IMG/VR virus record: IMGVR_UViG_3300032236_001859
Span: 124,001 to 188,000 of that record
DNA length: 64,000 bases
Direction: 5' to 3' (one strand)
Positions 6,093-58,724 of this stretch are shown in pieces. Position 1 is the stretch's first letter, and the number at the start of each line of letters is the position of its first letter. Made by a program: the position numbers and the translations under genes. The notes under the pieces were generated by a model. It was not told where the DNA came from, ran no database searches, and worked only from the letters and a program-made list of their open reading frames with translations.

Positions 6093-6134
6093 GGTCTCAA
6101 TTCCTTGTTGGTTTGTGGTTGGAGGCTACCGAGC

Positions 6135-10180: not shown

Positions 10181-10182
10181 GA

Positions 10183-11184
10183 TCAGTGCCCTGTAGCCAT
10201 GTTGACGACGCCGTTGGCCGCAGTACCCGCACCCCACCCAATTCCTGCGTGGATGAGCGCATTGCCAATCCCCTTACTAGGAAGTGTGCTGCGCGCCTTG
10301 CCCAGGTTCTCTGCGTAATTGCGGAGGTTAATCGCCTTGGCGTGCTCCAGTGGCAGATTCGTCACGGGGTCCAGCCCATAACCTTTACCGAGCTGCTGTT
10401 GCAGACGCCCCGAGATCTCCAGTGCCCTGGTGTGTTCCGGGGTCAAGATCTTCTGGTTATGCCCACTGTTAAACATCAGAGTTCTGGCTTCATCTGCTTT
10501 ATCTTGAACAACCCCTGCATTACGCTCGAAGTTGGATTGCTCACCCTTTGCCTTGAACTGAAGTGGATCTTTTAGCCATGACCACGCCGTTGGACTGGTT
10601 ATTGGCTTAGCATTACCGCCACCCTTGAGGACGTCGCCCTCAGAGCTCAACTCGGCGAGAACATTCTTGGGATTCACGGCGGCATCACGTACATGGAGCT
10701 GGACGGCCTTGGAGGCCTCCTCGGGGGTCATCCCGGGAACCCCAGTGTTTCCAAGATTCCTGGCAAGGGTGTCGGCGTGAGCGCCACCCTTGGTGATCTC
10801 GTCGACAACCCCACTCGTGGACTGTTGCCGGTAGGCGTCGCCAAACGGTAGATTCTTGCGGGTTACCGGGGCCAACGCGGCGGCACCGGCACCGAGACCA
10901 GTTAGAGTCCCAGGAGCCATCCCGGTGTACTTGTCAGTGAACTTGTCGACGGGCCCCCTGTTATCACCACCAATGCGTGATCCCAGGTAATCCCCGATTT
11001 CCTTGCGGTACAGATATGCGGCGCCGAGACCAGCGGCAAGGGTGCCACTGGCAAGGGCCAGTGACAACCATTCCTTGGCACCCCAGCCCTTGTCGTCTTC
11101 CTCGTCCTCGGCGTCATCGGAGACCGGGTACACGGCTTCAGCGGCCTGCTTAGCAAAGGCGTCGTGGTCGGCATGGGTTACCAT
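10183..11184 (-). CDS. K-x-A-motif protein with predicted membrane helices (putative internal/ejection protein)
   Basis: FAKQAAEA near the N-terminus, then WLSLALASGTLAAGLGAAYLY; C-terminal glycine-zipper ALIHAGIGWGAGTAA. Confidence 0.6.
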   Translation of the reverse strand: MVTHADHDAFAKQAAEAVYPVSDDAEDEEDDKGWGAKEWLSLALASGTLAAGLGAAYLYRKEIGDYLGSRIGGDNRGPVDKFTDKYTGMAPGTLTGLGAGAAALAPVTRKNLPFGDAYRQQSTSGVVDEITKGGAHADTLARNLGNTGVPGMTPEEASKAVQLHVRDAAVNPKNVLAELSSEGDVLKGGGNAKPITSPTAWSWLKDPLQFKAKGEQSNFERNAGVVQDKADEARTLMFNSGHNQKILTPEHTRALEISGRLQQQLGKGYGLDPVTNLPLEHAKAINLRNYAENLGKARSTLPSKGIGNALIHAGIGWGAGTAANGVVNMATGH

Positions 11185-13854: not shown

Positions 13855-16107
13855 TTAGCCGTCCATGGTGGAGTTGATGCCGAGACCGTAGAACTCGGGG
13901 TCCCCGGAGAGCGTGCGCTTGCGGAGGAAGATGATGAGATCACCGAGGCCCTCGAACGAGGACTTCAGGTTGTCACCGAGTTCAACGCTGTCTTCCTTGC
14001 CGAACTTTTCCTGGAACTCGTCGTAGTGCCAGTGCATCAAGAACAAGATGCGACCGAGGCGATCCATACCAGCAACAATGGTGGGCAGGAAGCGTTCGAT
14101 CATTTCGACAGGGGCATGAGTCTTGGTCAGGCTACCGAGGACAGCGGAATCGAAGACTTCTTTTTGACCCGTCTTCGCGGCTTGGTCGATGGCCTGGAAG
14201 GGGTCACCGCCACCTTCGTTCTCGGCGTCGCCGTGACCAAAGGGGGAGAAGTATTGGTATTGCTGGCGGTTGTCGGGGGTCTGGGAGGTCCGCGCCTGGG
14301 TTTCCCAGGGCACCTTGGTGGTATGGAAGCTGGACATCACTCCACCTTCGGAGGTGTCATTGATGTCCGGGAACGCCATCATGTTCTCAGACGCCGCTTG
14401 CTTCACCAACCAGTTCTGCGGGGCACGGAGGGCGTGGCGAAGCATGCTGCGGGTGTCGGATTCCGAGCACCCATGTTTCTTCATGAGATAACTGATCGCA
14501 GCTGTCTTCCCGAAGTAGTGGCTACCAAAATCATCCTTGATGTTGATGCCGGTTTCATCAGTCCAGACTTTAACAGCACTGGCCTGCTTCTTGAGGACTT
14601 CGATGATGGTGTTGTGGTCACCGAAGTCAGAGGCCTCGAGATGTTTCTCGAGACGGGTCTTCTCCCGGTTCTCCCAATCCAACTTGGCGTCGTCTTCACG
14701 GTTACCGTAGACCACAGCGGTGTAATACTTCGAGTTCACGTACAGCGTCGAGTTCGTTTTCTTGAGATCACGGTTTCCGGCTTCGGAGACAATGACCTGA
14801 TCGCAGTCGTGTTCACCAATGTAACCCAAGGGGCGGTTGATGGCGAAGACTCCACGATCCTTGTGGGCAAAACGCTCGGGGATCGAGCGGAGATCCCAGG
14901 TGGAACCCCCGTGGGTCTTATAGGTCGTGATGCCGTCATCACTGACCGCGGTGAAGACATCCAGGGGAGCCGAGGTCTTCACACCATCTTTGGCGACGAA
15001 GATGACTTGATCACCGGGGCGCACCTTGTTGGCGGCAACGCTGACCTTCTCGAGTTCCTTGGCAAAATCGGTTTCAGTGTACTGCCGCAGTGTTGAGATC
15101 GCACCAACTGCGGTGATACAAGTTTTCTCATCAGAGCACCGGATCACGAAAACCCTGCCGTTATCCGATGACATCGGGATCACAAGTGTGGGTTCCACGG
15201 AACCATTGGCGTAGAGGACATCGTAGAGTCCACCACCAGTAGGCGACGTCAGCTGCTGCTTGGTCTGGGTCGAGTACACAATGGACTTCGACATCTCAGG
15301 ACGCTTGTCGACAACTGCGACGTCACCTTCGAGGATCTGCTTGCGTTGGGCATCAGTGAGTTCATCGACGCCTTCTTGATCAATGGTCGAAATCACAGTG
15401 ATGGGCTCACCCTTTTGTTCCGCGGCGAGTTTAACAACACCGGGGACCCCGAAGGCGAGATCGGGGTAGAACTTACGAACCGCATTGGCGAGTTTAACAT
15501 GCCCTGCGGTCTTCGGGTTCACAATGGTATCCATGAACATCGAGGCGACATCGTGGCCCAGGGCTTCGATACCACTGGGGAGATCCACGGCACCCGCGAT
15601 CTTGCGGATATGTGTGATCTTGTGGATGGGAACCACAGGGCAGTCACCGGCGGCCTTGCGGGCCGCGGCACGCTTGGACAAACTGCTGCCGCCACCATCG
15701 CCATCATAAATACCAGCGGGCAATGTGCGGAGACGGTTGTAATCTGGGGTGCGTACACCACGTTGGACCCGGTTGCGTTTATCGGCTTCACCGAGAACAG
15801 TGGGGCGGCGATTGATGATGGAATTAACCCAGTCTTCACTCAAGGGCACGAAGAGATCTGAGTTCACGGAATAAATGGAGTCGAGTCCCTTGATCTCCCC
15901 GTTGAGGAAGAACACGGGGCTGTAATGCCAGTCGCCACCGATCTCAAAAGCGAACATGCCAACTGCACGACCGCCATCTTCATCGGCATCAATGAGTTGA
16001 AACCCGACGAGATAGTCGAGGAGAACCGGTGACTTATCACGGAGTCTGGCGTTGGCGAGGTCAGAGAACGTCTGCTCCAGCGCGGACTCAGAGGTATCTT
16101 GCGGCAT
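13855..16107 (-). CDS. Large head-region protein with clustered K-x-A sites
   Basis: 750 aa; AGGAG SD; SKRAAARKAAG, RKIAG, VKLAN, VKLAA, KKQAS, GKTAA, VKQAAS. Confidence 0.7.
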   Translation of the reverse strand: MPQDTSESALEQTFSDLANARLRDKSPVLLDYLVGFQLIDADEDGGRAVGMFAFEIGGDWHYSPVFFLNGEIKGLDSIYSVNSDLFVPLSEDWVNSIINRRPTVLGEADKRNRVQRGVRTPDYNRLRTLPAGIYDGDGGGSSLSKRAAARKAAGDCPVVPIHKITHIRKIAGAVDLPSGIEALGHDVASMFMDTIVNPKTAGHVKLANAVRKFYPDLAFGVPGVVKLAAEQKGEPITVISTIDQEGVDELTDAQRKQILEGDVAVVDKRPEMSKSIVYSTQTKQQLTSPTGGGLYDVLYANGSVEPTLVIPMSSDNGRVFVIRCSDEKTCITAVGAISTLRQYTETDFAKELEKVSVAANKVRPGDQVIFVAKDGVKTSAPLDVFTAVSDDGITTYKTHGGSTWDLRSIPERFAHKDRGVFAINRPLGYIGEHDCDQVIVSEAGNRDLKKTNSTLYVNSKYYTAVVYGNREDDAKLDWENREKTRLEKHLEASDFGDHNTIIEVLKKQASAVKVWTDETGINIKDDFGSHYFGKTAAISYLMKKHGCSESDTRSMLRHALRAPQNWLVKQAASENMMAFPDINDTSEGGVMSSFHTTKVPWETQARTSQTPDNRQQYQYFSPFGHGDAENEGGGDPFQAIDQAAKTGQKEVFDSAVLGSLTKTHAPVEMIERFLPTIVAGMDRLGRILFLMHWHYDEFQEKFGKEDSVELGDNLKSSFEGLGDLIIFLRKRTLSGDPEFYGLGINSTMDG

Positions 16108-16136: not shown

Positions 16137-18041
16137 TTAGCGAGGGGATCGCGGAGGGGAAGTCGGTAGCGGCGGCGTGCCATAAGCCCCAGTGGTCTTC
16201 AGGGTATCACCGAAACCGGTGGCCTTGGCAAGGGCGGGGACATAGCTGGTTGAGTTGGGATCGGATACCCTGGAGCGGTGCACGCTGTCAAGGAACCCTG
16301 ACGAGGTATAGAAACCGGAGAGCCTGGTCTGCCAGTCATTGTCATTGTAGACCCCCATGACCCCACGTTGCATCACGGGCTGGAAGTCGGGGTCATCATC
16401 ATGGGCATCGACATCCTTGATCCCCCACTTCTGGAGATCGGCGGATACCTTCTTGGTCACCCGGGTCCCCGGGGTGTAGTGAAGCACGGGCTCCTCGAGA
16501 TACTTCCCAACCGCCGAGTTCGGGGCTACCCGCTTGGTACCCGCTCTGGCCTTGTAGGCCCCGGCTACCGAGTTGTAGGAGGCAACATCATCGACGACGT
16601 GTTCCCCGATACCATTGGGGTTGGTGACCTTGACCCAGTTGAGTAAGCCGGCGACCACGGTTTCGATGTTCCTGCGATGGGTCTTGATGCCGTGGTTGGT
16701 CAGGGCCTCCTGCAGCATCTCAGCATACCTGCGGCGAGCCTCGCCGATACCGCGAAGCCTGACGAGCTGCTCGGGATGCGGGGCACCATCAGAGATGTCA
16801 TCCCCGGCTTCCAGGGTATCCCCTGGTTTCACCACGGGTTCGATTTCGGGGTGGAGATAGTAATCACGATCCCCCACGGTGACGAACTTGCCGCCCTGGG
16901 GGGCCCCGCGGATCCCCTTGACGACACCATCGACCTCGGCGAGTGGACCCGCCTCTGGGAATGTTTCTGGTGATTCTATAACACGGTTGAGATACTCAAA
17001 ACCCATGCGGAGATTCCGCTTCCCACCAATGACCCCGCTTTTGTGCTTTTCGTTTAAGGTGGCCTGGGATAGAGGGGCTCCAACACTCTGCGCAGCCGAG
17101 ATCCCAATGGGATCCCCGACATTGCTGAGTTCGGTGCGATCCCGACGACCCGCGGCGACACGGGAGACACCGCCGTCCTCAGAGGGCTCCGTCATCGGAC
17201 TGTGGACCAAGATGTCTTCGATGCCATCCTCAGATAACGATTCGAGGATATCCGCGGTGATGCGATCGCCGGCCTTGTGAGCCCCGGCATCCTTGGCGAG
17301 CACAGCACCGATGTTGTCGGCATCGCTGACCTTGGTAGGTAACCCCACGGGTAACCGGGTCATCGGGGGAGTATCTTTGTTGACGACGATGCGATGTGCG
17401 GCATTCGCCAACTTTTTTGACAAAAATCCGGCATCAGCTGTTGACATTTTTACCGCAATCATTCCGCGACGTTGCCCATAGGTCCCCGCCCAGTATTCCA
17501 CGGGATCCAAGCCCTCGCTGAGACTGTGGAGAATGGGAATCGGTACGATTTCATTGCGGTGGTCATTGACCAACCCGGAGGCCCCTCGGATCGCGTTGTA
17601 ATCCGACATCTTGCCGCGAGCACCAGATTTGACCTGGAACCAGTACGGGTTGTTCTCGGCTTCACCGGATTCCTTGAGGGCCTCCTGCATCTTCTCGACC
17701 ATGGGAAACATGACATCAGTGATGGCTTGCTTCTTCGCATCGGGGTCGAGGTCTGAGGTCTCAATGGCCATGACCCTGGAGCGAGCCCGCTGGATCAGCT
17801 TTTTCTCTTTGTCTGTTTTCTTGAGCCCGCTGAGACTGACACTGACGCCCTCGGTGAACGCGGCATCCCTGCCGACATCGTTCATCGTTTTCAGGACTTC
17901 CTTGTAACGCTCGGGGTACTTCTCGGCGACATGCCTAAGAATTGGCATCAGCTCTTTTTTGTCGATGGCTTTACCCCGGATCTGCATATCCGGTGGCAAG
18001 CTGTCATTGAGCAAAAGGGTGCCGACGGTGGTGGGATCCAT
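16137..18041 (-). CDS. rpoC: DNA-directed RNA polymerase beta' subunit, C-terminal half (bridge helix, trigger loop)
   Basis: KSGARG (cf. SGARG), GLDPVEYWAGTYGQRRGMIAVKMSTADAGFLSKKL (bridge helix, cf. GL...[30 protein letters not shown]), GDPIGISAAQSVGAPLSQATLNEKHKSG (trigger loop, cf. [28 protein letters not shown]). Confidence 0.93.
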   Translation of the reverse strand: MDPTTVGTLLLNDSLPPDMQIRGKAIDKKELMPILRHVAEKYPERYKEVLKTMNDVGRDAAFTEGVSVSLSGLKKTDKEKKLIQRARSRVMAIETSDLDPDAKKQAITDVMFPMVEKMQEALKESGEAENNPYWFQVKSGARGKMSDYNAIRGASGLVNDHRNEIVPIPILHSLSEGLDPVEYWAGTYGQRRGMIAVKMSTADAGFLSKKLANAAHRIVVNKDTPPMTRLPVGLPTKVSDADNIGAVLAKDAGAHKAGDRITADILESLSEDGIEDILVHSPMTEPSEDGGVSRVAAGRRDRTELSNVGDPIGISAAQSVGAPLSQATLNEKHKSGVIGGKRNLRMGFEYLNRVIESPETFPEAGPLAEVDGVVKGIRGAPQGGKFVTVGDRDYYLHPEIEPVVKPGDTLEAGDDISDGAPHPEQLVRLRGIGEARRRYAEMLQEALTNHGIKTHRRNIETVVAGLLNWVKVTNPNGIGEHVVDDVASYNSVAGAYKARAGTKRVAPNSAVGKYLEEPVLHYTPGTRVTKKVSADLQKWGIKDVDAHDDDPDFQPVMQRGVMGVYNDNDWQTRLSGFYTSSGFLDSVHRSRVSDPNSTSYVPALAKATGFGDTLKTTGAYGTPPLPTSPPRSPR

Positions 18042-19096
18042 TATGCAACTACCCTGCCATGCGGCATTTTAACCCTATTATTCTCACCGTCCTCACTATC
18101 CCCCTCCTCTGCATCATCTGCAACCGTAAGCGACTTGTACACTAGATATGCAAGAAGACTCGCTGCCCCTACTCCAGCTACACCCACCCCAACGGTGCCG
18201 AGTATATCATTTAGCGTACGCTGAGCTCCTAACGACTTCGGCGCTGGTAATGACCCTGAGCCTAATCCAGAGTCACCTTCAGTCACACTAGATGGGTTTG
18301 TATCTGTCTTAATTAGATTCTGATCTTTATTTTTATCCCCATCTTCTATGTGCCCCAGTATCTGTTGTACTCGTTTGTTGTTCGCTTCCATTCGTTCACG
18401 TATTTGCTCGTTCTGATAGTTATCATACTGCGCACCAACTCCGTTTACTTTTTCGGATTTCAACCAGTCACGGTAGGACTTTGCTAGTGATGTATCCCCT
18501 CGAAGATCACCCATGAATGTCTTAACTGCATCTTCGCGCTGTGCTGGTGTCATATCGGGCTTGAACTGCGGCCCATATTTCGAGATGTGGTCATATATCC
18601 AAGGTGCCCCTGCTGAGCCATTCGGGGGCCTGTCACCATTCGATAATGAGTATGCAGTCTCAGCCACCACCGCTGGAACCTCGGCCTCCATGGTTTCGGT
18701 AGGCATGCGCTCATTGTAGTGCGCCAACTCGTGCATGAGAACGTCATTCTGCGCGCTTTTACCATCTGGTGTGTGCAGCTCAATTTGATGTTCAGACGGA
18801 TACGCATCTGGGCGCAGCCAGTTACGCAAGCTCCATTTCTGGTTTGAATTACCTACGGTGCCTATGGACTGCGTAACATTGGCCTTCCCAGTGTATGGTA
18901 CCTGAACGCTGTCAGGTTTCTTATCAGGCCAATCAGCTGATCGAGTAAATGGTGGAGTAACAACTTTACGGCCCTTTATTATATCATCTCCTGGGATAAC
19001 ATCCCTGCCACCAGTGTAAATCATTTCCGCAGTTCGCTCCAATGTCGCAGCAACCTTAGAGCACAAGAAATGAAGGGCCTGGGCGGGAGTCAACAT
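18041..19096 (-). CDS. Putative zinc metallopeptidase (HExxH) with C-terminal membrane anchor
   Basis: VLMHELAHYNE...EAE at 18719-18733; N-terminal SKVAA; C-terminal hydrophobic ILGTVGVGVAGVGAASLLAYLVY plus acidic tail; lower GC. Confidence 0.55.
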   Translation of the reverse strand: MLTPAQALHFLCSKVAATLERTAEMIYTGGRDVIPGDDIIKGRKVVTPPFTRSADWPDKKPDSVQVPYTGKANVTQSIGTVGNSNQKWSLRNWLRPDAYPSEHQIELHTPDGKSAQNDVLMHELAHYNERMPTETMEAEVPAVVAETAYSLSNGDRPPNGSAGAPWIYDHISKYGPQFKPDMTPAQREDAVKTFMGDLRGDTSLAKSYRDWLKSEKVNGVGAQYDNYQNEQIRERMEANNKRVQQILGHIEDGDKNKDQNLIKTDTNPSSVTEGDSGLGSGSLPAPKSLGAQRTLNDILGTVGVGVAGVGAASLLAYLVYKSLTVADDAEEGDSEDGENNRVKMPHGRVVA

Positions 19097-19314
19097 TATC
19101 GACCCCCGGTGCGGATGACCTCAACGGGGGTTGGCGTCAAACCAAGTTTGCGAACCGTGGATGAGAAATCTGACTTCGTGGCATCGGTATGTGCAACCAA
19201 TCCGTTTTCCTCATAGGACAACGCCAGGGGTTGTCCGAAGTCATCTGTAACAATGACCTCGGCAACGCTGATGTGGATCTGGCGTCCATCGGAGAGGCGG
19301 ATGCGGGCGCGCAT
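19096..19314 (-). CDS. Small hypothetical protein
   Basis: Start moved to MRARIRLSDG (GAGG SD, 1 nt after the upstream stop); 72 aa. Confidence 0.65.
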   Translation of the reverse strand: MRARIRLSDGRQIHISVAEVIVTDDFGQPLALSYEENGLVAHTDATKSDFSSTVRKLGLTPTPVEVIRTGGR

Positions 19315-19315
19315 G

Positions 19316-20233
19316 TTACCTCGATGCCAAAACTGGAGCAGTTGAACTCTGAGGGGCCACTGGGGTATCCGCGAGAACTGGGGCTGTTGCACTCACCGGA
19401 GGCTTTTCGCCATTAACGGTGACAACGCCCTGACCGGCAGCCGGGGTCTTCCCTTTGCCGTAGCCGAGGCCGGCGCGACGATCCATGCCAGGCATCGAGT
19501 ACACGGGTTCCTTCTTCGGAGCACTCGCAGCAGCCTTCGAGAACCCCAGACGAGCCAGGAGTTCCTTGGCCATCTTCACGGTGTTGCCACCGATTGCGCT
19601 GGGGTCGAGTTGGCCACCTAGGGAACCCATGGGGCCCCCACCACCTTGGGGTTGCCCGGAGACCGCACCAACAGTTGCGGCGGCGTCGGCATCTGACTTC
19701 TTGCCCTTGTTCTCTTGTTCCTTCTTCTTGCCTTCTTGTTCGAGATCGAACTCGGCCTGGGCTTGTTCTTTGGTACGCCCTTCGCCGATGGAGGCCATGG
19801 CGCGTTCAACGATGTCCATGACAACGTCGGCTTGGCCACGGGTCACGGCGTCATCAGGGGTTCCCTTGACGTCAGGGGTTCCTGGAGCCGTGGGGTCCGC
19901 ACCTGCGCTGGGGTCGCCACCTGCTGAGGGGTCTTCACCACCGATGGCACCGAGCATGTCGCCACCAGGGGGCATACCACCTGCGGCAGCGGGATCGCCA
20001 CCAGGAGGAGCTCCGGCAGCACTGGGATCACCACCACCAGGTGGCATGCCACCCATGGCAGAGGGATCGCCACCAGGAGGCATCGGAGGGGCCCCTGCAG
20101 CTGCGGGGTCACCCCCAGGAGGTGCACCGCCAGCTGCGGAGGGATCACTGCCCGGAGGTGGTGCTGCTACAAAGGCTCGCTTCTGTGCGAACTCGTTGAG
20201 GCCTCGTTGAAAAAGTCTTGCGGAGATATCCAT
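19316..20233 (-). CDS. Pro/Gly/Ala low-complexity K-x-A protein with PGGDP(S/A)A repeats
   Basis: QKRAF followed by about 6 GGDP(S/A)A units; VKMAK, SKAAAS. Confidence 0.7.
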   Translation of the reverse strand: MDISARLFQRGLNEFAQKRAFVAAPPPGSDPSAAGGAPPGGDPAAAGAPPMPPGGDPSAMGGMPPGGGDPSAAGAPPGGDPAAAGGMPPGGDMLGAIGGEDPSAGGDPSAGADPTAPGTPDVKGTPDDAVTRGQADVVMDIVERAMASIGEGRTKEQAQAEFDLEQEGKKKEQENKGKKSDADAAATVGAVSGQPQGGGGPMGSLGGQLDPSAIGGNTVKMAKELLARLGFSKAAASAPKKEPVYSMPGMDRRAGLGYGKGKTPAAGQGVVTVNGEKPPVSATAPVLADTPVAPQSSTAPVLASR

Positions 20234-20247
20234 GTTTCACCTTGGGG

Positions 20248-20276
20248 AGTCTAGTGTTACTTGACCACACCTTCAA
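20248..20276 (-). promoter_or_regulatory. Sigma70-like promoter
   Basis: Minus strand TTGAAG-17 nt-TAGACT in the 50-bp intergenic gap upstream of ATG 20233. Confidence 0.5.
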
Positions 20277-20283
20277 TCAAAGT

Positions 20284-21021
20284 TCATAGAAAAGCACTGG
20301 CACCTGGGGGAAGATTCTCAACAGGGGGCGGGGTTGTTGGCTTTGGTGCAGGCCTCACAGCATCACTGATTGCACCCATGCCTTCACGGATCTGGGGTAC
20401 TGCTTTGTCGACATGGGGACCGGCGACATAACCAGCGGCACCACCGGCGAGGGCGGCGAGCAGGGCGTTACGCCACTTATTCTTCTTACTCAGCAGAGCT
20501 GCACCCCCACCAGCCAAGGCTGCACCGGTAACAGCACCGATGTTCGCGGGATCCTTGTAGAACGGAGTCGCCGGAGCGGCATCTTGTGCGGTCTTTCGCC
20601 CAGCGCCTTGAATGGGTTGCAGCTTTGGCTTCACCACTGGAGTCGTCGCCGACTTCGGTGGGTTCTGTGCCTTGAAGAGTTGATTCCGGAAGTCTTCGTT
20701 GATGCCTTTGGTGTTGTCTTCGATAACAGCGGCCTTCTTGGCAATCGCGCTGGCACCAGCTCCGGAAAGAGCACCGAGACCTTCACGGATCTGGGGTACT
20801 GCTTTATCAACATGTGGTCCTGCGACATAACCAGCGGCACCGCCGGCGAGAGCTGCGAGAAGTGCATTACGCCACTTGTTCTTCTTACTCAACAGGGCAG
20901 CACCACTACCACCAATGGCAGCACCAGCGGCGGCTCCGATATTTGCGGGGTCTTGGTAAAACGGGACCTCAGCGGCGGCTACTTTGGTGAGGAGTGCGGC
21001 GAGAAGACGTGTGGACTGCAT
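20284..21021 (-). CDS. K-x-A protein with duplicated glycine-zipper membrane module
   Basis: Two near-identical units PFY(Q/K)DPANIGA..GAA..G.GAALLSKKNKWRNALLAALAGGAAGYVAGPHVDKAVPQIREG. Confidence 0.8.
   Translation of the reverse strand: MQSTRLLAALLTKVAAAEVPFYQDPANIGAAAGAAIGGSGAALLSKKNKWRNALLAALAGGAAGYVAGPHVDKAVPQIREGLGALSGAGASAIAKKAAVIEDNTKGINEDFRNQLFKAQNPPKSATTPVVKPKLQPIQGAGRKTAQDAAPATPFYKDPANIGAVTGAALAGGGAALLSKKNKWRNALLAALAGGAAGYVAGPHVDKAVPQIREGMGAISDAVRPAPKPTTPPPVENLPPGASAFL
20381..20565. repeat. 185-bp intragenic direct repeat, copy 1
   Basis: ccttcacggatctggggtactgcttt...aacgg; aligns without gaps to 20780..20964, with mostly synonymous differences. Confidence 0.9.
20780..20964. repeat. 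185-bp intragenic direct repeat, copy 2
   Basis: Second copy of the 20381..20565 unit. Confidence 0.9.
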
Positions 21022-21030
21022 GGAGTATTC

Positions 21031-24000
21031 CTACTTGTGGTTATGGGATGACAGGATAACAACTGGATCGGCGACACCAAGATCCCCCCTGAGGTAGGCC
21101 TTGTAGGCATCCTCCTTGGAGGCAAAGGTTCGCGTGGGCTTATCTTTCTTGACATTGGTGGCCAGGTAAAGCCCGGCGAGGTAGTCTTTATCAGGCTTCA
21201 AGTGAACATCGAAATCAGCGGGATGCCAGAGATTCTTCGAGGGCATCATCTTCTCGATGACATCTTGGACAGCGGAATGATGGGATGGCACATGAAGATT
21301 GATCTTGTCGCCATCGAAGTCGAGGTTCGCCCCGGGTTCGACGACCTGGGGGACCCCAATGTTGTTTCCCTTGGAGAGCACTGGCCAGGCCCCCACGTAA
21401 TTGTACCGCTGGAGTGCCGGGGCGCGATCCCAGTAAACCGGGCGTGCCTTCATCTCGGCCTGGAGTTCACGGAGCGCCGCTGGCTTCTGTTCCCGGACAG
21501 CCATGACGGCTTCACGCGCACTCCACCCTGATCTGACGAGGCGACGGATGACATAGGGGCGATACAGGGTCCACGCCATTTCCTTGGGGATCGAGACCTG
21601 ATCCATGTCGAGTTCGGGATCCGGGGTGGCCACCCCGCGCCCCACGGAATCCACGGCTTGACCGAGAACCTTGCGTTGGAAACGCGCAAACTTGGGGGAG
21701 TCGCCAACACCAATGGCGTTCTGGAGAAGTCCTTTGACGCCTTGTTCGACATGCTTGGGGTTGACAGGGGCACCGAGACCAGCCACGGCTTTGGCAGCCG
21801 CATACATGGCCCCGTATTCCTCACCGGCGTCACCAAAGGCCTTCTGGGCATCTGTGTAATTCTTCCCGGACTCCATGAGGTCGTGGTAGAGATAGTTGGC
21901 ATCGTGGATGATGTCCATCTTCCCCGCACGTATAACAGGTCTGAACTTCGGTGGTATAACGGGGATCTTGGAGATCATGAGATCACCGGGATCCACCCCT
22001 GCAGACTTCAAACCACTGAGATAGTTGAGGGCACGGACGTGGACATCACGGGATGACTTCGATCCCGTCTTGACCCCCTGGACGTGCATGGCGATTTCAC
22101 GGTCAACATTGATCCCCTTGAGAGCAGTCTCAATGGCTTCTGGTCCCGTTTTGTCACCAATCTTTTCCTGCCCGCTGAGAACATCGAGGAACTTCTGCTT
22201 GGTGAGCCCAAGGATCCTGATGATGGGTTCTTCCATAACTGGATTCGGGATCTTCTGGGGGAGCTCAATCCTGGTGAAGTGGCGTCCATCGGCACCACCA
22301 GTTTTGGCGAGATCGAAGAGGCCGCCATCCTTGGGCTGCATGGTCTCGAAGTCAAAAGTCTCCGAGCTGGAGACTGAATGCGGGGCCAGGGCGTCGGTGT
22401 CGGCATCCGTCATCGGGGCCAACTTCAGCCGGCCCTGGTTCTCGCGAACATTGACCCCAGCCCCCTTGAGGAGATCGAGGAAGTGACCATGGGCTCCAGA
22501 GGCCTCAGGCATCGCGGGATCCATCCCAAGTTTCACTGAACGCCAGTAGTCGTCATTACGCTGCCCCCTGATGAGCTTGGCGTCCTTGAGAACATTGGTG
22601 GCCCCAGCGCTGAGCAGGCATTGGACACCGAGAAGCGCGATCTTCTTGCTGCCCTCGGGGCCACCCTTGGCAGGGGAATCATCAGAGGTGTAACCCCCGG
22701 TATCACGTGCGGCGAGCCCGGACTCCGCGGTGTGGTGCAACCGCATGAGATGCTGGACCCCAGTGAAGATGCCCTTGATCTTATGACCAGTCTTGGGATC
22801 CGTGACATCGTCGAGTTCAGTGATCCCATTGACCTTGGCCTCATTCAGGGCGAAGTCACCGAGATCATCGTGATCAAAAGATTTGAGAACATACGGCTTC
22901 CCGGTTTTCCTGGCAACCTTACCCAGCAGGGTTTCAGCGAGCACCGAGGGGTTCGCACGAGAGATCACGCCCAAGGAGTTCACGATGATGTCCAGGGGCT
23001 TGCCATCCGGACCAATAGGCATCTCACCATCGGGTACGATCTGGGAGACCACACCCTTGTTGCCGTAACGTGCGGTGAGCTTGGATCCCTCAGTCATGGG
23101 CTCCACGCTGGAGATCATGACCTTGATCCCCTTGCGGGTTCTCACGACATCAGTGACCTGGCCGGGAGTCGAGTGATCCCAGGTCTGCGAGGCATCGGCG
23201 AATGCAGACCTCGCCGAGGGGGTAACAACCCCACCAGGTCTCGGGGTCTTCTTGCGCACCGCGAGGAGCACGGGATCCCCGGGCTGCACAATGGCACCCT
23301 CTTTGATCACTCCGTCATCATCAATACTCGAGATCTGCTCTGGTTTATACTTGCCTTGGAAGATCGAGGAGTAATCCGCTTTCTTCGTGGAATGAATGTG
23401 CTTGTCGAGTTCGAGCTCATGTTTGTAGGCATGCTGGGATGACAGTCGTCGAGCCGTGGACTCCGAGATCTTGAAGCCGTCTTCATAGGTGTGCCCGGAG
23501 CCCACCATGTAGCCCACGTTGAAGTTGGCCCCCATGGTGGCCTGACCCTTGTCATCAGTAAAGTTCGACTTCGCTAGGACATCACCTGGCTTGAAGGCGT
23601 CGCCTTCTCGGACCAATGGAGTGTTATGCAAACTTGTTTTACGCGCCAAGGGGTAGTTGTTATACAATTCGTGGCGCTCTTTTTTGCCACCGGCGTAGAC
23701 GACATCGATGTGGTCTGGTGTTACCGCAACAACACGGCCAGGGGCCTTGGCCTTCACGGCACCCATCCAGACCCCCATGGAATCATGTATTGAGTTACCA
23801 TCGGGGTTCGAGGCCTGGACTAAGGGGGCCTCAGGTGATTGTAATGGGAGGGCCTGTGACGTGTTATGAACTACTACACACGCACCACACATAAACACAT
23901 TATCTTCCATGTCCAAGTCATACACGTACGTATATTGTTTCACATCTAATTCTTCTATGGACTCTACACGATCCCACCACACATCCGAGTCTAACCACGC

Positions 24001-26886
24001 AATGCTGGCTGCGTCCTCCCCCAAAAGTGTGCGTACGCTTTCCCTTGTTAGCTGGTTACTGTAAATACGCTTGTACTCCCGGCTTCCTCTACGCGTGTGC
24101 GCCCGCAGACTAGCGTCGAGATTTGGCCACCTTGGGAACCAGTCCGCTGATTTTTTGCCAGACCATCTTGCAGCTCTTATCCTTAAATCCTTTCGTTCGC
24201 AGTGCAGTGTAGGGAGTCTACTTACATGTTCAGTGCGTACCTCAAAATAATGCTGAATAGCATGAGATCCACCTGGTCCAGTCATAACATGTGTAGCGCT
24301 TCTGTTGCACATTATACCCATCGTTGCGCATAGGTTTACAAAACCATCTATCAATTTACCGCTTCTGCTGCTACCGTTCACACGCACAGCATCTCGGCGA
24401 GGTTGCACCCCACCATCTCCAGCAAGGTACCCAGCTAGAAGTCCACGCCGAAACTCTAAAGGAGCAAAAAAGACCCAGCCAGGTAGCACCTTGTTGTAAG
24501 CCCCAGCACCGTAATCACTGCTAATAGCAGATGCGAATTGCGCCCAGCAAACATTGACTTTATCCATCTTGCCATCTACGCGACCACTAAGCACAGAAGC
24601 ATTTACTCCTATGTTTCGGAAGTATTCAAATAATTTATTCAGAACATCAGAATCACAGTTTGCGAAACTGACTGCTGATGCAAAAAACTTGTGTCCATCT
24701 CTGTGCGCATGCACTAAACTACCCTCTGCGATGTACATACCATGCACCCACCCAGTTTCGTAATTTAGTGGTAATGCCGCAGTTGGATACGCATTATGCT
24801 TTCTGCCTGCGGCTACTACCCAATCGGTGCGATCGCATCTGCTATCGGGAATCTTACCCACAATCGGTACTGGCACCCCTCTGGTGAGATCCTGTGTGTG
24901 TACCTTAGTAAGACCCCCATCTTCTCCAATAGTGACAAAGCTGTGATCATCAGTCGCATTTACATGACGCCCACTCTTCAATGTGACTTTTTTGATTCGC
25001 TTTACATTCAAATGCTTGTCTAAGGCCCGTACACGCCTCCATATCACTTTGGATGTGGTCTTATCGACCGACACAGCACAGTCCCCTTCAGCGTGCACGT
25101 AATCTTCAATTAGTCCGTAATAATGCTCGCCATTATCACGCCTAATCAAAACAGGAGTGTCTCCAGTTACTGACATCCTTGCACCCATCAGGGTTCGCTG
25201 CGACTTCGCACCTTGAGTCATCGGCACCATGTTGGTGAGCCGGGAGAACATCGAGGAACCATGGGGGAGTTCGTAGTCGACCTCTGTGGCAGGCTTCCAC
25301 TTGATGTCCTCACCATCGAGAACACGCACCATCGGGGGCAATGGCTTCCCGAGACCGTGCATACCCACTGACGCCGAGATCTCGGGATCATTGGCGATGT
25401 CATTCATGTCGACGACGTGATCCTCGTATTTACCGTTGGCCCCCATCAAGGGTACCTTGTAGAGTTCCCTCTTCGCCGCCTTCGCGAACTCACCTGGGAA
25501 TGCAATCGGCTTCTTGGAGGCCTGGAGTGCTGAAAGCGTGATATCCTCACCCTTACGGGAGCGGACCTTGAAATAGAGCCGACCATCGGATCCCTTGAGA
25601 GCACCATCGGTGACCCGCATGTCGACGCCGATGTTCTGACCTTCAGGTGCCCGGATGGGATCTATGATACCAAAGTAACTGGGTTGGACGCCACGTGCGG
25701 ATCGCGGTACGGCCTGATTGGAGGAGATTCCACCTTCACCAAGCCGTGTTATAGTCTGCCGGGCATCCATGATTTCCATGGGGTTGGTGTCTTCAACTGA
25801 AGCCATGAGCCCACTTTGGAAAACGCTGTCCACTGCTGGGTTCAGGAGTCCTGGGGATACGTTGCCGAGGTTGCCTTCACGTGTGGCCCGCCATAGCAGT
25901 TTTCTCATGGCGTCGCCGCCACGGCTCAGGCGCTCCTCGAAGAAGTCCTCGGGGCCATGAAAGCTCTGGAAGGCCTGGGAGTCCCGGACGTCATCGGGGA
26001 CCTCATCGCGACTCCGCTTCAACATCTTGGATGTCGCGTTCAACATGGTATCAATGTTGAAGTTCTTATATTTGGTGCCTAAAGTGGTCTCCGTGGTTTC
26101 CTCGTCGAGCTCGGCTCTTCCCAGGATCTCATGGAGTTTGTCTTTGAGGGCTTCGCTGGCGACTTCTTGGTCACCTCGGCGTCCCATCTTGGCTACAATC
26201 TTTCTGGCCTCCTGGGCGTCATGCCCACCCGGAGGTCTCCAGTTCAGCTTGAAGAGTTCGTCGCCCCATGCCGCCTTGATGGCGTCATCGGGGACCCCCA
26301 TCGATCGCAGCAAGGGGTACAGCCGGGTTCCACTCTGACCCACGTTTAATTTGAACACACCTGTTGAGGGCTCGAGCTGGAGATCGAAACCACGGCCACT
26401 ACCTGGCTTCGGATTCACCTGTGCCTTGACGTCCCCGTTCTGTTGCCGGAGCACGAAGACCCCGGGGCGCAGACGCTGCTGGTTCTTAGCCGCCCAGATG
26501 GTGCCACCGCGAACAAAGATGCCACGCGGGGTCAAATGGGGGACATGTGCAAGAGTTGTCTCGGTTTCATCGACGACTTGGCCGGATGCTTTATCGATGA
26601 GGCGGACGTTGCCCTTGATGGCGCGCTGCATGCTCTGCCGAGCCATCAACGCTTTCTTTTCATCACTGAGGCTAGGGTTGTAGTCCTGGGCATAATCAGG
26701 GTTCGAGATCTCGACCCGGTACTTCTCGTTCTCCACTGGCTTCAGGGCACGGACCCCACGCAGGGCATTGGAGTAGATGGCGTCGCGTTGTCCGCTGACG
26801 TCATCAAAGCTCCTATAGGTCACCGGAGGAACGGGACCAGGGCTCCCCGAGGGGGCATCAAATGCACCTTTGAGAGCACCCAGCAT
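21031..26886 (-). CDS. rpoB: DNA-directed RNA polymerase, beta subunit fused to N-terminal half of beta' (contains catalytic DFDGD), intein-containing
   Basis: Start moved to MLGALKG (26886, 1 nt after the upstream stop). Beta motifs: RTLMGARM/TSQALPL, HTYEDG, GSKLTARYGNKGVVS, LDIIVNSLGVISRAN, LMRLHH, ARDTGGY, GGPEGSKKIALL. Beta' motifs: ETFDFETMQPKDGGLFD, IPVIPPKFRP, VLGQAVDSVGRGVATP, DRAPALQR, NLDFDGD (21307-21327), GLYLAT. Confidence 0.95.
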   Translation of the reverse strand: MLGALKGAFDAPSGSPGPVPPVTYRSFDDVSGQRDAIYSNALRGVRALKPVENEKYRVEISNPDYAQDYNPSLSDEKKALMARQSMQRAIKGNVRLIDKASGQVVDETETTLAHVPHLTPRGIFVRGGTIWAAKNQQRLRPGVFVLRQQNGDVKAQVNPKPGSGRGFDLQLEPSTGVFKLNVGQSGTRLYPLLRSMGVPDDAIKAAWGDELFKLNWRPPGGHDAQEARKIVAKMGRRGDQEVASEALKDKLHEILGRAELDEETTETTLGTKYKNFNIDTMLNATSKMLKRSRDEVPDDVRDSQAFQSFHGPEDFFEERLSRGGDAMRKLLWRATREGNLGNVSPGLLNPAVDSVFQSGLMASVEDTNPMEIMDARQTITRLGEGGISSNQAVPRSARGVQPSYFGIIDPIRAPEGQNIGVDMRVTDGALKGSDGRLYFKVRSRKGEDITLSALQASKKPIAFPGEFAKAAKRELYKVPLMGANGKYEDHVVDMNDIANDPEISASVGMHGLGKPLPPMVRVLDGEDIKWKPATEVDYELPHGSSMFSRLTNMVPMTQGAKSQRTLMGARMSVTGDTPVLIRRDNGEHYYGLIEDYVHAEGDCAVSVDKTTSKVIWRRVRALDKHLNVKRIKKVTLKSGRHVNATDDHSFVTIGEDGGLTKVHTQDLTRGVPVPIVGKIPDSRCDRTDWVVAAGRKHNAYPTAALPLNYETGWVHGMYIAEGSLVHAHRDGHKFFASAVSFANCDSDVLNKLFEYFRNIGVNASVLSGRVDGKMDKVNVCWAQFASAISSDYGAGAYNKVLPGWVFFAPLEFRRGLLAGYLAGDGGVQPRRDAVRVNGSSRSGKLIDGFVNLCATMGIMCNRSATHVMTGPGGSHAIQHYFEVRTEHVSRLPTLHCERKDLRIRAARWSGKKSADWFPRWPNLDASLRAHTRRGSREYKRIYSNQLTRESVRTLLGEDAASIAWLDSDVWWDRVESIEELDVKQYTYVYDLDMEDNVFMCGACVVVHNTSQALPLQSPEAPLVQASNPDGNSIHDSMGVWMGAVKAKAPGRVVAVTPDHIDVVYAGGKKERHELYNNYPLARKTSLHNTPLVREGDAFKPGDVLAKSNFTDDKGQATMGANFNVGYMVGSGHTYEDGFKISESTARRLSSQHAYKHELELDKHIHSTKKADYSSIFQGKYKPEQISSIDDDGVIKEGAIVQPGDPVLLAVRKKTPRPGGVVTPSARSAFADASQTWDHSTPGQVTDVVRTRKGIKVMISSVEPMTEGSKLTARYGNKGVVSQIVPDGEMPIGPDGKPLDIIVNSLGVISRANPSVLAETLLGKVARKTGKPYVLKSFDHDDLGDFALNEAKVNGITELDDVTDPKTGHKIKGIFTGVQHLMRLHHTAESGLAARDTGGYTSDDSPAKGGPEGSKKIALLGVQCLLSAGATNVLKDAKLIRGQRNDDYWRSVKLGMDPAMPEASGAHGHFLDLLKGAGVNVRENQGRLKLAPMTDADTDALAPHSVSSSETFDFETMQPKDGGLFDLAKTGGADGRHFTRIELPQKIPNPVMEEPIIRILGLTKQKFLDVLSGQEKIGDKTGPEAIETALKGINVDREIAMHVQGVKTGSKSSRDVHVRALNYLSGLKSAGVDPGDLMISKIPVIPPKFRPVIRAGKMDIIHDANYLYHDLMESGKNYTDAQKAFGDAGEEYGAMYAAAKAVAGLGAPVNPKHVEQGVKGLLQNAIGVGDSPKFARFQRKVLGQAVDSVGRGVATPDPELDMDQVSIPKEMAWTLYRPYVIRRLVRSGWSAREAVMAVREQKPAALRELQAEMKARPVYWDRAPALQRYNYVGAWPVLSKGNNIGVPQVVEPGANLDFDGDKINLHVPSHHSAVQDVIEKMMPSKNLWHPADFDVHLKPDKDYLAGLYLATNVKKDKPTRTFASKEDAYKAYLRGDLGVADPVVILSSHNHK
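23863..25173 (-). mobile_element. Intein (437 aa) with LAGLIDADG homing endonuclease in RNAP beta
   Basis: Begins SVTGDTPVLI, has block B TDDH, LAGLIDADG blocks GWVHGMYIAEGS and GLLAGYLAGDGG, and ends YVYDLDMEDNVFMCGACVVVHN followed by Thr. Removal restores GARM-TSQALPL (cf. GANMQRQAVPL). Lower GC than the exteins. Confidence 0.93.
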
Positions 26887-26887
26887 A

Positions 26888-27658
26888 TCAGCCCACCGCC
26901 GCTGCTGGCTGCTTCCTGACCACGGGAACCATGACTGCGGTTGGCGTCTCGGCCCCAATGTTATTGAGATAGTCTCGCATCGCCTTGGCCTTGGCGCGAT
27001 ACTTGTTTTCGTCGCGATTCGCGTTGTAGGCCTTCATGGCCACCAGGGTGCCCGCGATGCCCAATGGGATACCAAGCGGCTTCAGGATTTCACCAATGGT
27101 GGAGGCGCCACGACTCACGATGGAGGGGACGACATCATCCAGCGCAGCCGCTGCTTTCGGAAACTGGACATGATCCCCGAACTCGGAGAGACCCACGTTT
27201 TCAATGTAGACATCAGCGGCGACTTTGAGCGCACGGGAGATCCCTTGATCCGCGGGATCCGATTCTCCATTGATCAAGGCCTGGACACGCCGACGACTCC
27301 GCTCCAACGATTTCTGGGCTTTCGCCTTACGCTTGGAGTCCAGAATCTTATCAGCCAGAGACCAGCCCCCAACAGTGGACAGGGTGCCAATTGTGCCCTG
27401 GATCGCGGTGTCGAGAACATTGTCCGCGGCTTGTTTAACTTTAACGCCCTTCTTACGCAGTTCCTCGGCTTCTTCTTCGCTGACATCCACGGGGACCTCA
27501 ACTGCTGAGCTCTCCACTGGGGGCAACTTGGCCGGAGCACGTGTACCGGACTTATTCGCGATGTCGTAGCCCCAACGGGCCAGACGAGCACCGACACCAA
27601 GACCGAGACCTGTAATCGCTGGAAACGCGACGTCACTATAGGTAAGATTTATGGCCAT
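26888..27658 (-). CDS. K-x-A protein with glycine-zipper/membrane helices
   Basis: ITGLGLGVGARLA, VKQAAD, PKAAAA, LGIPLGIAGTLVA. Confidence 0.65.
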   Translation of the reverse strand: MAINLTYSDVAFPAITGLGLGVGARLARWGYDIANKSGTRAPAKLPPVESSAVEVPVDVSEEEAEELRKKGVKVKQAADNVLDTAIQGTIGTLSTVGGWSLADKILDSKRKAKAQKSLERSRRRVQALINGESDPADQGISRALKVAADVYIENVGLSEFGDHVQFPKAAAALDDVVPSIVSRGASTIGEILKPLGIPLGIAGTLVAMKAYNANRDENKYRAKAKAMRDYLNNIGAETPTAVMVPVVRKQPAAAVG

Positions 27659-58637: not shown

Positions 58638-58724
58638 ATAACACTCCATGTAGTCGTTGGTTTTTGTGTCACAGGGGTTACATCCTGTGGGGGTTTACTC
58701 TCAGTCAAGTCCGTTGGTGTCCGC

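What the first reader, a model, noticed from the sequence alone, without database searches (positions are those of the whole stretch)
16137..26886. RNA polymerase with non-canonical partition: beta+beta'N fused (both catalytic barrels in one chain) and beta'C separate, embedded in the head cluster
Seen: one ORF runs from beta motifs through GHFLDLLKGAGVNVRE directly into the beta' start (LKLAPMTD...ETFDFETMQPKDGGLFD, junction near 22440) and ends just after NLDFDGD...GLYLAT. A second ORF resumes exactly at the next beta' segment (TTVGTLL) with bridge helix and trigger loop. Four unrelated genes lie between. No alpha, omega or sigma gene is in the window. Established: bacterial RNAP is beta/beta'; phiKZ/AR9 enzymes split each subunit into two; some phage RNAPs are single-chain. 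This break point differs from both. Inference: the location among K-x-A genes suggests a virion-packaged RNAP.
Basis: partly seen in the sequence, partly recalled or inferred. Interest (0 to 1): 0.75.

Follow-up and report, generated by a model that had tools for sequence, protein, structure and literature searches.

The report
Two-chain phage RNA polymerase, beta fused
A 216-kb uncultured phage encodes a bacterial-type RNA polymerase in two chains (whole beta fused to the first half of beta-prime, plus the second half of beta-prime); this layout is real, is shared by hundreds of related phages, and has apparently not been pointed out before.

Summary
The minus-strand ORF 21031..26886 encodes a complete RpoB homologue that runs without a linker into the N-terminal half of RpoC (Mg site NLDFDGD). 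ORF 16137..18041 encodes the rest of RpoC (bridge helix, trigger loop).

It is not an assembly error:
- A second assembly has zero differences, and a lake-water relative is continuous across the junction.
- All 80 fetched IMG/VR loci and all 120 best database homologues keep the same fusion and the same stop.

It is precisely absent from close relatives.

- The beta-prime break lies within about 15 residues of the cyanobacterial site, which a review says the phiKZ/AR9 enzymes share. Only the unsplit, fused beta is unusual.
- Two of the four intervening genes are conserved across the clade.
- A sigma-70-family gene lies outside the window.
- The genome has a single RNAP set and no alpha or omega.

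Isolated phages (Salmonella phage Arash; Vibrio phages D181, D148, D69) share the layout. In Arash both chains and the sigma are abundant in virion mass spectrometry, which supports packaging. I found no paper that describes this partition. Verdict: a new variant of a known kind, moderately interesting.

The parts
21031..26886 (-). Gene for chain A: complete beta fused to beta-prime N-terminal half. Precursor 1951 aa; 1514 aa after intein removal.
   Evidence: Pfam Rpb2_3, Rpb2_6, Rpb1_1, Rpb1_2. Alignment to RpoB/RpoC. Start confirmed by P0003.
22432..26886 (-). Beta portion (includes the intein). Ends ...GAGVNVRENQG, equivalent to the RpoB C-terminus. GNKG catalytic-loop motif at 23053..23070.
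   Evidence: RpoB aligned to 1336/1342. Motif coordinates.
23863..25173 (-). Class-1 intein with LAGLIDADG homing endonuclease, 437 aa. Ser1, block B TDDHSF, C-terminal HN, +1 Thr. Inserted in the GANMQRQAVP-equivalent motif (E. coli beta M685|Q686).
   Evidence: Pfam PF14890 and PF14528. The intein-less allele P0003 reads GARM-H-SQALPL. A relative's contig lacks exactly a net 1311 nt here. Coordinates.
21031..22431 (-). Beta-prime N-terminal half. N-terminal Zn ribbon deleted; clamp helices present; DPBB-A with NLDFDGD (21307..21327). Ends about 45 aa after GLYLAT.
   Evidence: RpoC 160-515 aligned. Junction alignment across the family.
20284..21021 (-). 245-aa ORF with a weak glycine-zipper match. 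Lineage-specific insert between the RNAP genes.
   Evidence: Sub-threshold Pfam Gly-zipper hits. Found only in the two closest relatives.
19316..20233 (-). Protein X, 305 aa. Low-complexity Gly/Pro/Asp-rich repeats (GGxPPxGDP...). Conserved position directly after chain A in 38 of the 39 relatives examined.
   Evidence: jackhmmer over gap ORFs (composition bias is possible). Alignment.
19096..19314 (-). Protein Y, 72 aa, small globular beta-rich protein. Conserved upstream of beta-prime-C in relatives (directly upstream in most). Function unknown.
   Evidence: 38 of the 39 relatives examined. Start set by the alignment. AF2 pLDDT 92.8. No PDB fold match.
18041..19096 (-). 351-aa ORF with no family match. 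Lineage-specific insert, absent from the 96%-identical relative L010. TAATG overlaps on both sides.
16137..18041 (-). Gene for chain B: beta-prime C-terminal half, 634 aa. Bridge helix 17397..17498, trigger loop 17031..17117.
   Evidence: Pfam Rpb1_5. PDB beta-prime hits at E 6.5e-41; residue 21 aligns to residue 3-10 of cyanobacterial RpoC2. Coordinates.
13855..16107 (-). Protein Z, 750 aa. Conserved gene immediately downstream of beta-prime-C. Homologue of Arash gp218, which was detected in virions.
   Evidence: Found in 60 of 80 loci. Arash gp218 match. No Pfam, PHROG, Atlas or fold match.
34495..36375 (-). Portal protein; upstream anchor of the head module.
   Evidence: Arash gp204 E 4e-56. 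Weak phrog_64 and PF05133 hits.
8780..10237 (-). Candidate head maturation protease (related to Arash gp222).
   Evidence: Weak phrog_18299 hit. Arash match.
5154..6092 (-). Major capsid protein homologue.
   Evidence: Arash gp226 E 2e-23.

Best explanation
This is the only RNA polymerase of a complete 216-kb tailed phage. It is a bacterial-type (two double-psi-beta-barrel) enzyme built from two polypeptides.

Chain A is translated as a 1951-aa precursor. A LAGLIDADG intein must excise itself from a conserved beta motif to give a 1514-aa protein. That protein contains all of beta covalently joined, without a linker, to the N-terminal half of beta-prime (clamp helices and the Mg-binding NLDFDGD barrel).

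Chain B (634 aa) supplies the bridge helix, the trigger loop and the C-terminal clamp part of beta-prime. Chain A therefore holds both barrels but needs chain B for a working active centre.

No alpha or omega is encoded. I infer that the covalent beta to beta-prime link replaces the alpha-dimer assembly platform.

The genes lie in the late head operon between portal and capsid genes. By analogy with the homologous proteins of Salmonella phage Arash, the enzyme is most likely packaged in the capsid and injected with the DNA to start transcription independently of the host. A sigma-70-family factor encoded elsewhere in the genome, and co-conserved in relatives, probably gives it promoter specificity. 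Substitutions in the rifampicin pocket predict drug insensitivity.

Shown: the architecture, its conservation, the intein, catalytic motifs, the single RNAP set and the sigma homologue. Inferred: packaging, early transcription, use of the sigma factor, rifampicin insensitivity and the assembly role of the fusion.
For: Architecture and motifs:
- Domain content and alignment to RpoB/RpoC and PDB chains.

The sequence is real:
- Independent contigs agree.
- 176 IMG/VR loci encode a relative. In 80 of 80 fetched loci one frame crosses the junction and stops at the same place. In 67 of them beta-prime-C is a separate ORF downstream on the same strand.
- 120 of 120 best homologues cross the junction in a single alignment.
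- The beta-prime-C N-terminus is conserved in the best 150 representatives.

Intein:
- Pfam matches, all splicing residues present, and an intein-less allele in relatives.

Single RNAP set, no alpha or omega:
-.

Head-module synteny with Arash:
- Portal, chain A, chain B, gp218 homologue, protease-like gene, major capsid protein.

Virion evidence from Arash:
- gp206 gave 3516 spectra (the most of any protein), gp216 1210, and sigma gp10 467 (PMC10585845).

Sigma factor:
- Homologue of Arash gp10 at G000:C1 about 88.5-89.6 kb.
- Present in 3 of 3 near-complete relatives searched.
- Its profile matches SigA, RpoS and RpoD regions 2-4 at E 5e-9.
- The complex model places it on the clamp-helix region of chain A: score 0.67, best of 3 controls 0.00. 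That mark was reached by 51 of 78 solved complexes and 2 of 108 mismatched pairs.

Rifampicin pocket:
- Q513A, D516E, H526A, R529T, S531T, I572D.
Against: - There are no virion or expression data for this phage itself.
- The Arash particle proteome also lists primase, helicases and ribonucleotide reductases. Its authors say abundant non-structural proteins may have been carried over.
- The sigma factor could instead serve the host polymerase. The complex score may reflect memory of the many solved sigma/beta-prime structures.
- With a single RNAP set, it is open who transcribes middle and late genes.
- Intein splicing, the assembly role of the fusion and rifampicin insensitivity are all untested.
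Confidence: 0.75

Rival explanations
1. The enzyme is real but is not packaged. It is made during infection and transcribes middle or late genes inside the cell, while host RNAP (possibly with the phage sigma) transcribes the early genes.
For: The genome has only one RNAP set, unlike phiKZ-type phages with separate virion and non-virion enzymes. The Arash particle proteome includes many replication enzymes, so carry-over is possible. Sigma-encoding large phages commonly redirect host RNAP (PMC7824862).
Against: The genes sit inside a co-oriented, tightly packed head operon whose order is conserved from this phage to Arash at 25-32% identity. Arash gp206 had the highest spectral count of all proteins, above the major capsid protein.
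Confidence: 0.2
2. The fusion exists only in the precursor. The prohead protease (or another protease) cuts at or near the beta/beta-prime junction, so the mature enzyme has separate beta, beta-prime-N and beta-prime-C chains, as in other split phage RNAPs.
For: A K-L-A tripeptide lies exactly at the junction (aa 1488-1490). K-x-A is enriched in several neighbouring head-module proteins. Head-internal proteins of large phages are often processed (general knowledge).
Against: K-x-A is not enriched in either RNAP chain (z 1.2 and -0.4). The junction K-L-A is not conserved in the family, where the consensus is ...GxxxQLxPMTD. No cleavage motif is established for this phage.
Confidence: 0.08
3. 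The fused ORF is an assembly or frameshift artefact, or a decaying gene.
For: None found.
Against: A second assembly has zero differences. Another study's contig is continuous over the junction. The same frame is present in 80 of 80 loci and 120 of 120 homologues down to 34% identity. Catalytic residues are invariant in the family alignment.
Confidence: 0.01

Closest known systems
Salmonella phage Arash gp206/gp216 (OQ632216; PMC10585845); Vibrio phages D181, D148, D69
   Same: Same partition: beta plus beta-prime-N in one gene and beta-prime-C in a separate gene. Same head-module position next to the portal. A sigma homologue is present (Arash gp10). Identity is 25-32%.
   Different: Arash has no intein. 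D181 carries a group I intron with a homing endonuclease at the same hot spot instead of an intein. A different set of genes lies between the two chains. Arash gp206/gp216 were annotated as plain 'beta' and 'beta-prime'; the D181 ORFs are annotated 'hypothetical protein'.
phiKZ/AR9-type jumbo-phage multisubunit RNAPs (virion and non-virion)
   Same: Phage-encoded beta/beta-prime-like enzyme without alpha or omega. Beta-prime is split after the first barrel at the site also used by cyanobacteria (PMC7598289). One form is packaged in virions.
   Different: Here beta is unsplit and fused to beta-prime-N. There is one RNAP set, not two. A sigma-70-family factor is present. The sequence is much closer to bacterial RNAP (about 243-252 bits) than to PBS1 (73 bits).
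Naturally fused beta/beta-prime of Helicobacter and Wolbachia (recalled from general knowledge, not tested here)
   Same: The beta C-terminus is joined head-to-tail to the beta-prime N-terminus.
   Different: Those enzymes keep beta-prime whole and still use alpha and omega.
Cyanobacterial/plastid RpoC1 (gamma) / RpoC2 split
   Same: The beta-prime break lies within about 12-18 residues of the same place: P0002 residue 21 aligns to RpoC2 residue 3-10.
   Different: Beta is a separate subunit there, and alpha and omega are present.
mReC metagenomic phages (Weinheimer & Aylward 2020) and YerA41-like phages
   Same: Caudoviricetes with RNAP close enough to cellular beta/beta-prime for Pfam/COG detection.
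   Different: Those have separate, adjacent, unsplit genes: beta about 1011 aa with beta-prime about 904 aa, and beta-prime 1090 aa with beta 925 aa in vB_Yru_GN1.
crAss-like gp66 / YonO / P23-45 single-chain two-barrel RNAPs
   Same: Both barrels are in one polypeptide, and some are virion-packaged.
   Different: According to the introduction of PMC7481178, those are highly diverged from cellular beta/beta-prime. Here standard Pfam beta and beta-prime domains score strongly, and the bridge helix and trigger loop sit on a second chain.

Membership tests
Multisubunit (beta/beta-prime, two-DPBB) RNA polymerase | Beta barrel domain (Rpb2_6) with the GNKG lysine loop | tested here: met
   PF00562 E 3.3e-38. 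RYGNKG at 23053..23070.
Multisubunit (beta/beta-prime, two-DPBB) RNA polymerase | Beta-prime barrel with the NADFDGD Mg-binding triad | tested here: met
   NLDFDGD is present. The three Asp are invariant in the family alignment.
Multisubunit (beta/beta-prime, two-DPBB) RNA polymerase | Bridge helix and trigger loop | tested here: met
   P0002 residues 182-215 and 309-337 align to E. coli beta-prime 714-940, including the trigger-loop His.
Canonical bacterial core (alpha2, beta, beta-prime, omega) | Alpha and omega subunits encoded | tested here: not met
   No PF01000, PF01193 or PF01192 match in the complete genome at E<=1; all 14 control genomes matched.
phiKZ/AR9-type jumbo-phage RNAP | Beta-prime split after DPBB-A | tested here: met
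   The break is within about 15 aa of the cyanobacterial break. Equivalence with phiKZ/AR9 is taken from PMC7598289 and was not aligned here.
phiKZ/AR9-type jumbo-phage RNAP | Beta split into two or three polypeptides | tested here: not met
   Beta is one continuous reading frame, fused to beta-prime-N.
phiKZ/AR9-type jumbo-phage RNAP | Two paralogous sets (virion and non-virion) | tested here: not met
   The 216-kb genome has a single locus each for PF00562 and PF00623.
phiKZ/AR9-type jumbo-phage RNAP | No sigma factor | tested here: not met
   A sigma-70-family homologue is present and co-conserved.
Virion-packaged RNAP | Protein present in purified particles and injected | not testable with these tools
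   Indirect only: Arash homologues are abundant in particle mass spectrometry, and the genes lie in the head operon.
Class-1 intein with LAGLIDADG endonuclease | N-terminal Ser/Cys, block B TxxH, C-terminal HN, +1 Ser/Thr/Cys, two LAGLIDADG motifs, precise absence in alleles | tested here: met
   S572, TDDHSF, HN|T1009, GMYIAEGS and LAGYLAGDGG. PF14890 and PF14528. Intein-less alleles exist. Splicing activity was not tested.
mReC lineage (Weinheimer & Aylward 2020) | Separate full-length beta and beta-prime genes (each >=800 aa) | tested here: not met
   The supplement lists adjacent genes of about 1011 and about 904 aa. Here the layout is a fused 1514-aa chain plus a 634-aa chain.
Sigma-70 family (for the out-of-window partner) | Regions 2-4 in order | tested here: inconclusive
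   Single-sequence Pfam hits are sub-threshold. The profile of four homologues matches SigA, RpoS and RpoD 414-598 at E 5e-9 to 1e-6.

The most novel reading that the evidence does not exclude
This clade represents a third, so far uncharacterised lineage of virion-packaged, bacterial-type RNA polymerases. It would be a minimal two-polypeptide core (beta fused to beta-prime-N, plus beta-prime-C) that assembles without alpha or omega. It would use a co-packaged phage sigma-70-family factor, and as the only polymerase of the phage it would run the whole transcription programme independently of the host.
Probability: 0.35. Interest if true: 0.75.

Novelty: new variant of a known kind. Interest (0 to 1): 0.6.

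Why it matters
Phage multisubunit RNAPs inform how the cellular enzyme can be cut, fused and assembled without its alpha-dimer platform. They are also central to host-independent infection strategies.

This lineage offers a natural two-chain, alpha- and omega-less core that is much closer to bacterial RNAP than the phiKZ enzymes and that still appears to use a sigma factor. That makes it a tractable system for asking three questions:
- What is the minimal assembly requirement of the enzyme?
- How is a large RNAP packaged and injected?
- How does one enzyme serve early and late transcription?

It has cultured members (Arash on Salmonella, and the D181-type phages isolated from a seawater and oyster mix), so experiments are possible now.

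The genes are also a dense landing site for inteins and introns: 47 of the 120 closest homologues carry at least one intein-sized insertion, at ten or more sites. This is useful for studying how homing elements target conserved active-site motifs.

Tried and rejected
- **Near-identical DNA search in isolated phages:** no match.
- **PHROGs and Pfam on the four intervening genes and their neighbours:** essentially nothing.
- **Protein X as an alpha-like platform:** rejected. It is a low-complexity Gly/Pro/Asp repeat protein.
- **Protein Y as an omega-like subunit:** not supported. The confident AF2 model (pLDDT 92.8) is a five-strand plus one-helix fold with no PDB match (best E 0.75).
- **Protein Z:** no Atlas lead. 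The AF2 model is only pLDDT 59.6 and has no fold match. The idea that the long beta-prime-C relatives are beta-prime-C fused to Z was tested and rejected (0 of 149). Of six such relatives scanned, one extension carries NUDIX plus SNF2 helicase domains, one carries two DUF domains, and four have no Pfam match.
- **X and Y profiles against Arash and D181 ORFs:** no hits.
- **Vibrio phage D181 as a three-chain variant split within beta:** rejected. The apparent split is a group I intron.
- **Group I introns in the window:** none.
- **A conserved protease site at the junction:** not supported.
- **Matching IMG/VR contig names to the mReC list:** not possible because the naming schemes differ. Only the gene sizes could be compared.
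- **Alignment sent for folding:** It was re-sent without that row.
- **Phylogeny with phiKZ-type enzymes:** not attempted, because there were too few outgroup sequences in hand and long-branch problems are known (PMC7598289).
Full report
**Source and layout.** The window is bases 124001-188000 of a complete 216,043-bp IMG/VR virus record with direct terminal repeats. All substantial ORFs in the region are on the minus strand.

**The two RNAP genes.** The long ORF 21031..26958 starts at a TTG. Its true start is the ATG at 26886, because the 95%-identical metagenomic homologue P0003 begins there.
- Pfam finds, in order: Rpb2 domain 3, an intein splicing domain with a LAGLIDADG endonuclease, Rpb2 domain 6 (E 3e-38), Rpb1 domain 1 and Rpb1 domain 2.
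- ORF 16137..18041 carries Rpb1 domain 5.
- PDB sequence searches give bacterial beta and beta-prime chains for the first protein and beta-prime chains for the second, at E 1e-35 to 1e-41.

**Mapping on Salmonella RpoB/RpoC (fetched).**
- Beta aligns up to residue 1336 of 1342 (...GAGVNVRENQG).
- The next residues (RLKLAPMTD...ETFDFETMQPKDGGLFD) correspond to RpoC from about residue 15-20. There is therefore no linker. The junction codons are at 22431/22432.
- The beta-prime N-terminal zinc ribbon is deleted.
- RpoC 160-515, including the clamp helices and the Mg-binding motif (here NLDFDGD, 21307..21327), follows. The chain ends about 45 residues after GLYLAT.
- The second protein begins MDPTTVG, equivalent to E. 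coli beta-prime about residue 569. It contains the bridge helix (17397..17498) and the trigger loop with its histidine (17031..17117).
- Both catalytic barrels are thus on chain A. The mobile elements of the active centre are on chain B.

Residues 572-1008 of the precursor (23863..25173) form a class-1 intein. It has Ser1, block B TDDHSF, two LAGLIDADG motifs, C-terminal His-Asn and a +1 Thr. It is inserted in the motif equivalent to E. coli beta GANMQRQAVP, between M685 and Q686.
- P0003 lacks it and reads GARM-H-SQALPL.
- A 23,960-bp contig of a roughly 93%-identical phage from a lake-water metagenome of another study skips 1351 nt and has 40 nt in their place. The net loss is 1311 nt, exactly the intein.
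- The mature chain A is therefore 1514 aa.

**Not an artefact.**
- A 180,558-bp Logan contig from the probable source sample covers 21031-26958 with no difference. The lake-water contig is continuous across the junction.
- A search of 5.8 billion proteins gave 683 hits at E<=1e-10. All 120 listed hits carry both beta and beta-prime Pfam domains. All 120 cross the junction in a single alignment.
- IMG/VR holds 176 loci that encode a relative.
- In all 80 fetched loci (34-96% identity) one open frame crosses the junction and stops at the same position.
- In the 67 loci that reach far enough, beta-prime-C is a separate ORF downstream on the same strand, 0.8-7.3 kb away.
- The best 150 representatives of the beta-prime-C family all start at the same residue.
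- The partition is therefore an ancient, selected feature of a large clade of phages. Many of them are 170-226 kb. They come from lake water, other freshwater, sediment, soil and wetland samples.

**Genes between the two chains.** These are not all unrelated.
- In most relatives the gap holds just two genes. One is a protein of about 240 aa and the other about 75-80 aa. Profile searches link them to window ORFs 19316..20233 (X) and 19096..19314 (Y) in 38 of the 39 relatives examined.
- X is a low-complexity Gly/Pro/Asp repeat protein, so part of its signal may be compositional.
- Y folds confidently (pLDDT 92.8) into a small beta-rich domain with no PDB match.
- The 245-aa and 351-aa ORFs are lineage-specific insertions.
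- A 750-aa protein immediately downstream (Z, 13855..16107) is conserved in 60 of 80 loci. It matches Arash gp218. Its fold could not be identified.
- TAATG overlaps show a tightly packed operon.

**Genomic context.**
- The cluster is syntenic with Salmonella phage Arash: portal (gp204), chain A (gp206), chain B (gp216), gp218, a protease-like gene (gp222) and the major capsid protein (gp226). Identity is 25-32%.
- The genome has only one locus each for the beta and beta-prime barrel domains.
- It has no match to alpha or omega families.
- Outside the window, at about 88.5-89.6 kb of the genome, lies a homologue of Arash gp10, annotated as a sigma factor.
- That homologue is present in 3 of 3 near-complete relatives searched.
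- A profile of four members matches SigA, RpoS and RpoD regions 2-4 at E 5e-9 to 1e-6.
- A complex model places the protein on residues 1675-1742 of P0001. This is the region aligned to the beta-prime clamp helices. The score was 0.67 and the best of 3 controls was 0.00. That mark was reached by 51 of 78 solved complexes and 2 of 108 mismatched pairs. Because many sigma/beta-prime complexes are solved, the pass may reflect likeness rather than proof, and it cannot tell phage RNAP from host RNAP as the partner.

**Virion packaging.**
- The Arash paper reports gp206 as the most detected protein in particles (3516 spectra). It also lists gp216 (1210 spectra), sigma gp10 (467) and gp218 (1149).
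- The authors note that abundant non-structural proteins may have been carried over (PMC10585845).
- Together with the conserved head-operon position, I take packaging and injection as the most likely reading. It is not shown for this phage.

**Comparison with known systems.**
- The beta-prime break is not new. P0002 residue 21 aligns to residue 3-10 of cyanobacterial RpoC2. The review PMC7598289 states that phiKZ/AR9 virion and non-virion RNAPs share that site.
- What is new relative to phiKZ-type enzymes is an unsplit beta fused to beta-prime-N, a single enzyme set and a sigma homologue.
- In tblastn the enzyme is far closer to bacterial RNAP (about 243-252 bits) than to YerA41-type (89 bits) or PBS1 (73 bits) enzymes.
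- mReC contigs list separate adjacent beta (about 1011 aa) and beta-prime (about 904 aa) genes. YerA41-like phages have beta-prime of 1090 aa plus beta of 925 aa.
- Reviews up to 2026 and targeted searches did not mention this partition. Arash gp206 and gp216 were annotated simply as beta and beta-prime.

**Mobile elements in the family.**
- 47 of the 120 closest chain A homologues carry one to three intein-sized insertions at ten or more sites. These include residue 572 and the DFDGD motif.
- Many beta-prime-C relatives carry inserts near residues 195-208 or 329.
- Vibrio phage D181 looks as if beta were split at the very site of the intein here. Rfam finds a group I intron (100.7 bits) plus a homing endonuclease gene there, so its mRNA should restore the same fused chain.

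**Predictions.** Rifampicin-pocket positions are substituted: Q513A, D516E, H526A, R529T, S531T and I572D. The enzyme should therefore be insensitive to the drug. This is inference only.

**Verdict.** The feature is a new variant of phage multisubunit RNAP. It is widespread, has cultured representatives and is apparently unremarked in the literature searched.

Noticed in passing
window 55227..58649 (-): A 1140-aa ORF with a LAGLIDADG_3 domain (E 2.7e-8) and a faint ribonucleotide-reductase barrel hit. It is probably a second intein-bearing gene in the window.
   Followed up: no
L091 (Vibrio phage D181, OZ196140) 5832-6112 and 6126-6743: A group I intron (RF00028, 100.7 bits) followed by a homing endonuclease gene interrupts the fused RNAP gene. 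The site is the same conserved motif where the window has its intein. The record annotates two separate hypothetical proteins.
   Followed up: yes
Chain A family, P0003-P0122; beta-prime-C family, P0123-P0271: Both families are intein hot spots. 47 of 120 chain A homologues have 1-3 insertions of 340-540 aa at ten or more sites. Several beta-prime-C relatives have inserts at about residue 200 or 329. One beta-prime-C relative (P0176) is fused to NUDIX plus SNF2-helicase domains.
   Followed up: partly
window 19316..20233 (-): Protein X consists largely of degenerate repeats such as GGMPPGGDPSAA, rich in Gly, Pro and Asp. It is probably disordered, and it is conserved in position after chain A across the clade.
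   Followed up: partly
window 2843..3250, 7251..8777, 8780..10237, 11188..12687, 13855..16107 (-): The tripeptide K-x-A occurs 2-4 standard deviations more often than in shuffled sequences in these head-module proteins. It is not enriched in either RNAP chain. It may be a maturation-protease motif, but this is unproven.
   Followed up: partly
window 28823..34498 and 43669..49071 (-): Two giant ORFs (1891 and 1800 aa) have no Pfam or PHROG match. The first lies between the portal and the RNAP genes and is only 34% identical in a relative whose RNAP is 94% identical.
   Followed up: no
window 39717..41804 and 49073..52093 (-): A 695-aa ORF has weak HAD-hydrolase and phosphoheptose-isomerase-like PHROG hits. 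A 1006-aa ORF has a DUF2793 domain (E 8.6e-13).
   Followed up: no
G000:C1 about 88546-89610 (-), outside the window (L090 1483..2547): A sigma-70-family gene that is homologous to Arash gp10 and lies next to a homologue of the Arash structural protein gp13. It therefore also sits in a structural block.
   Followed up: yes
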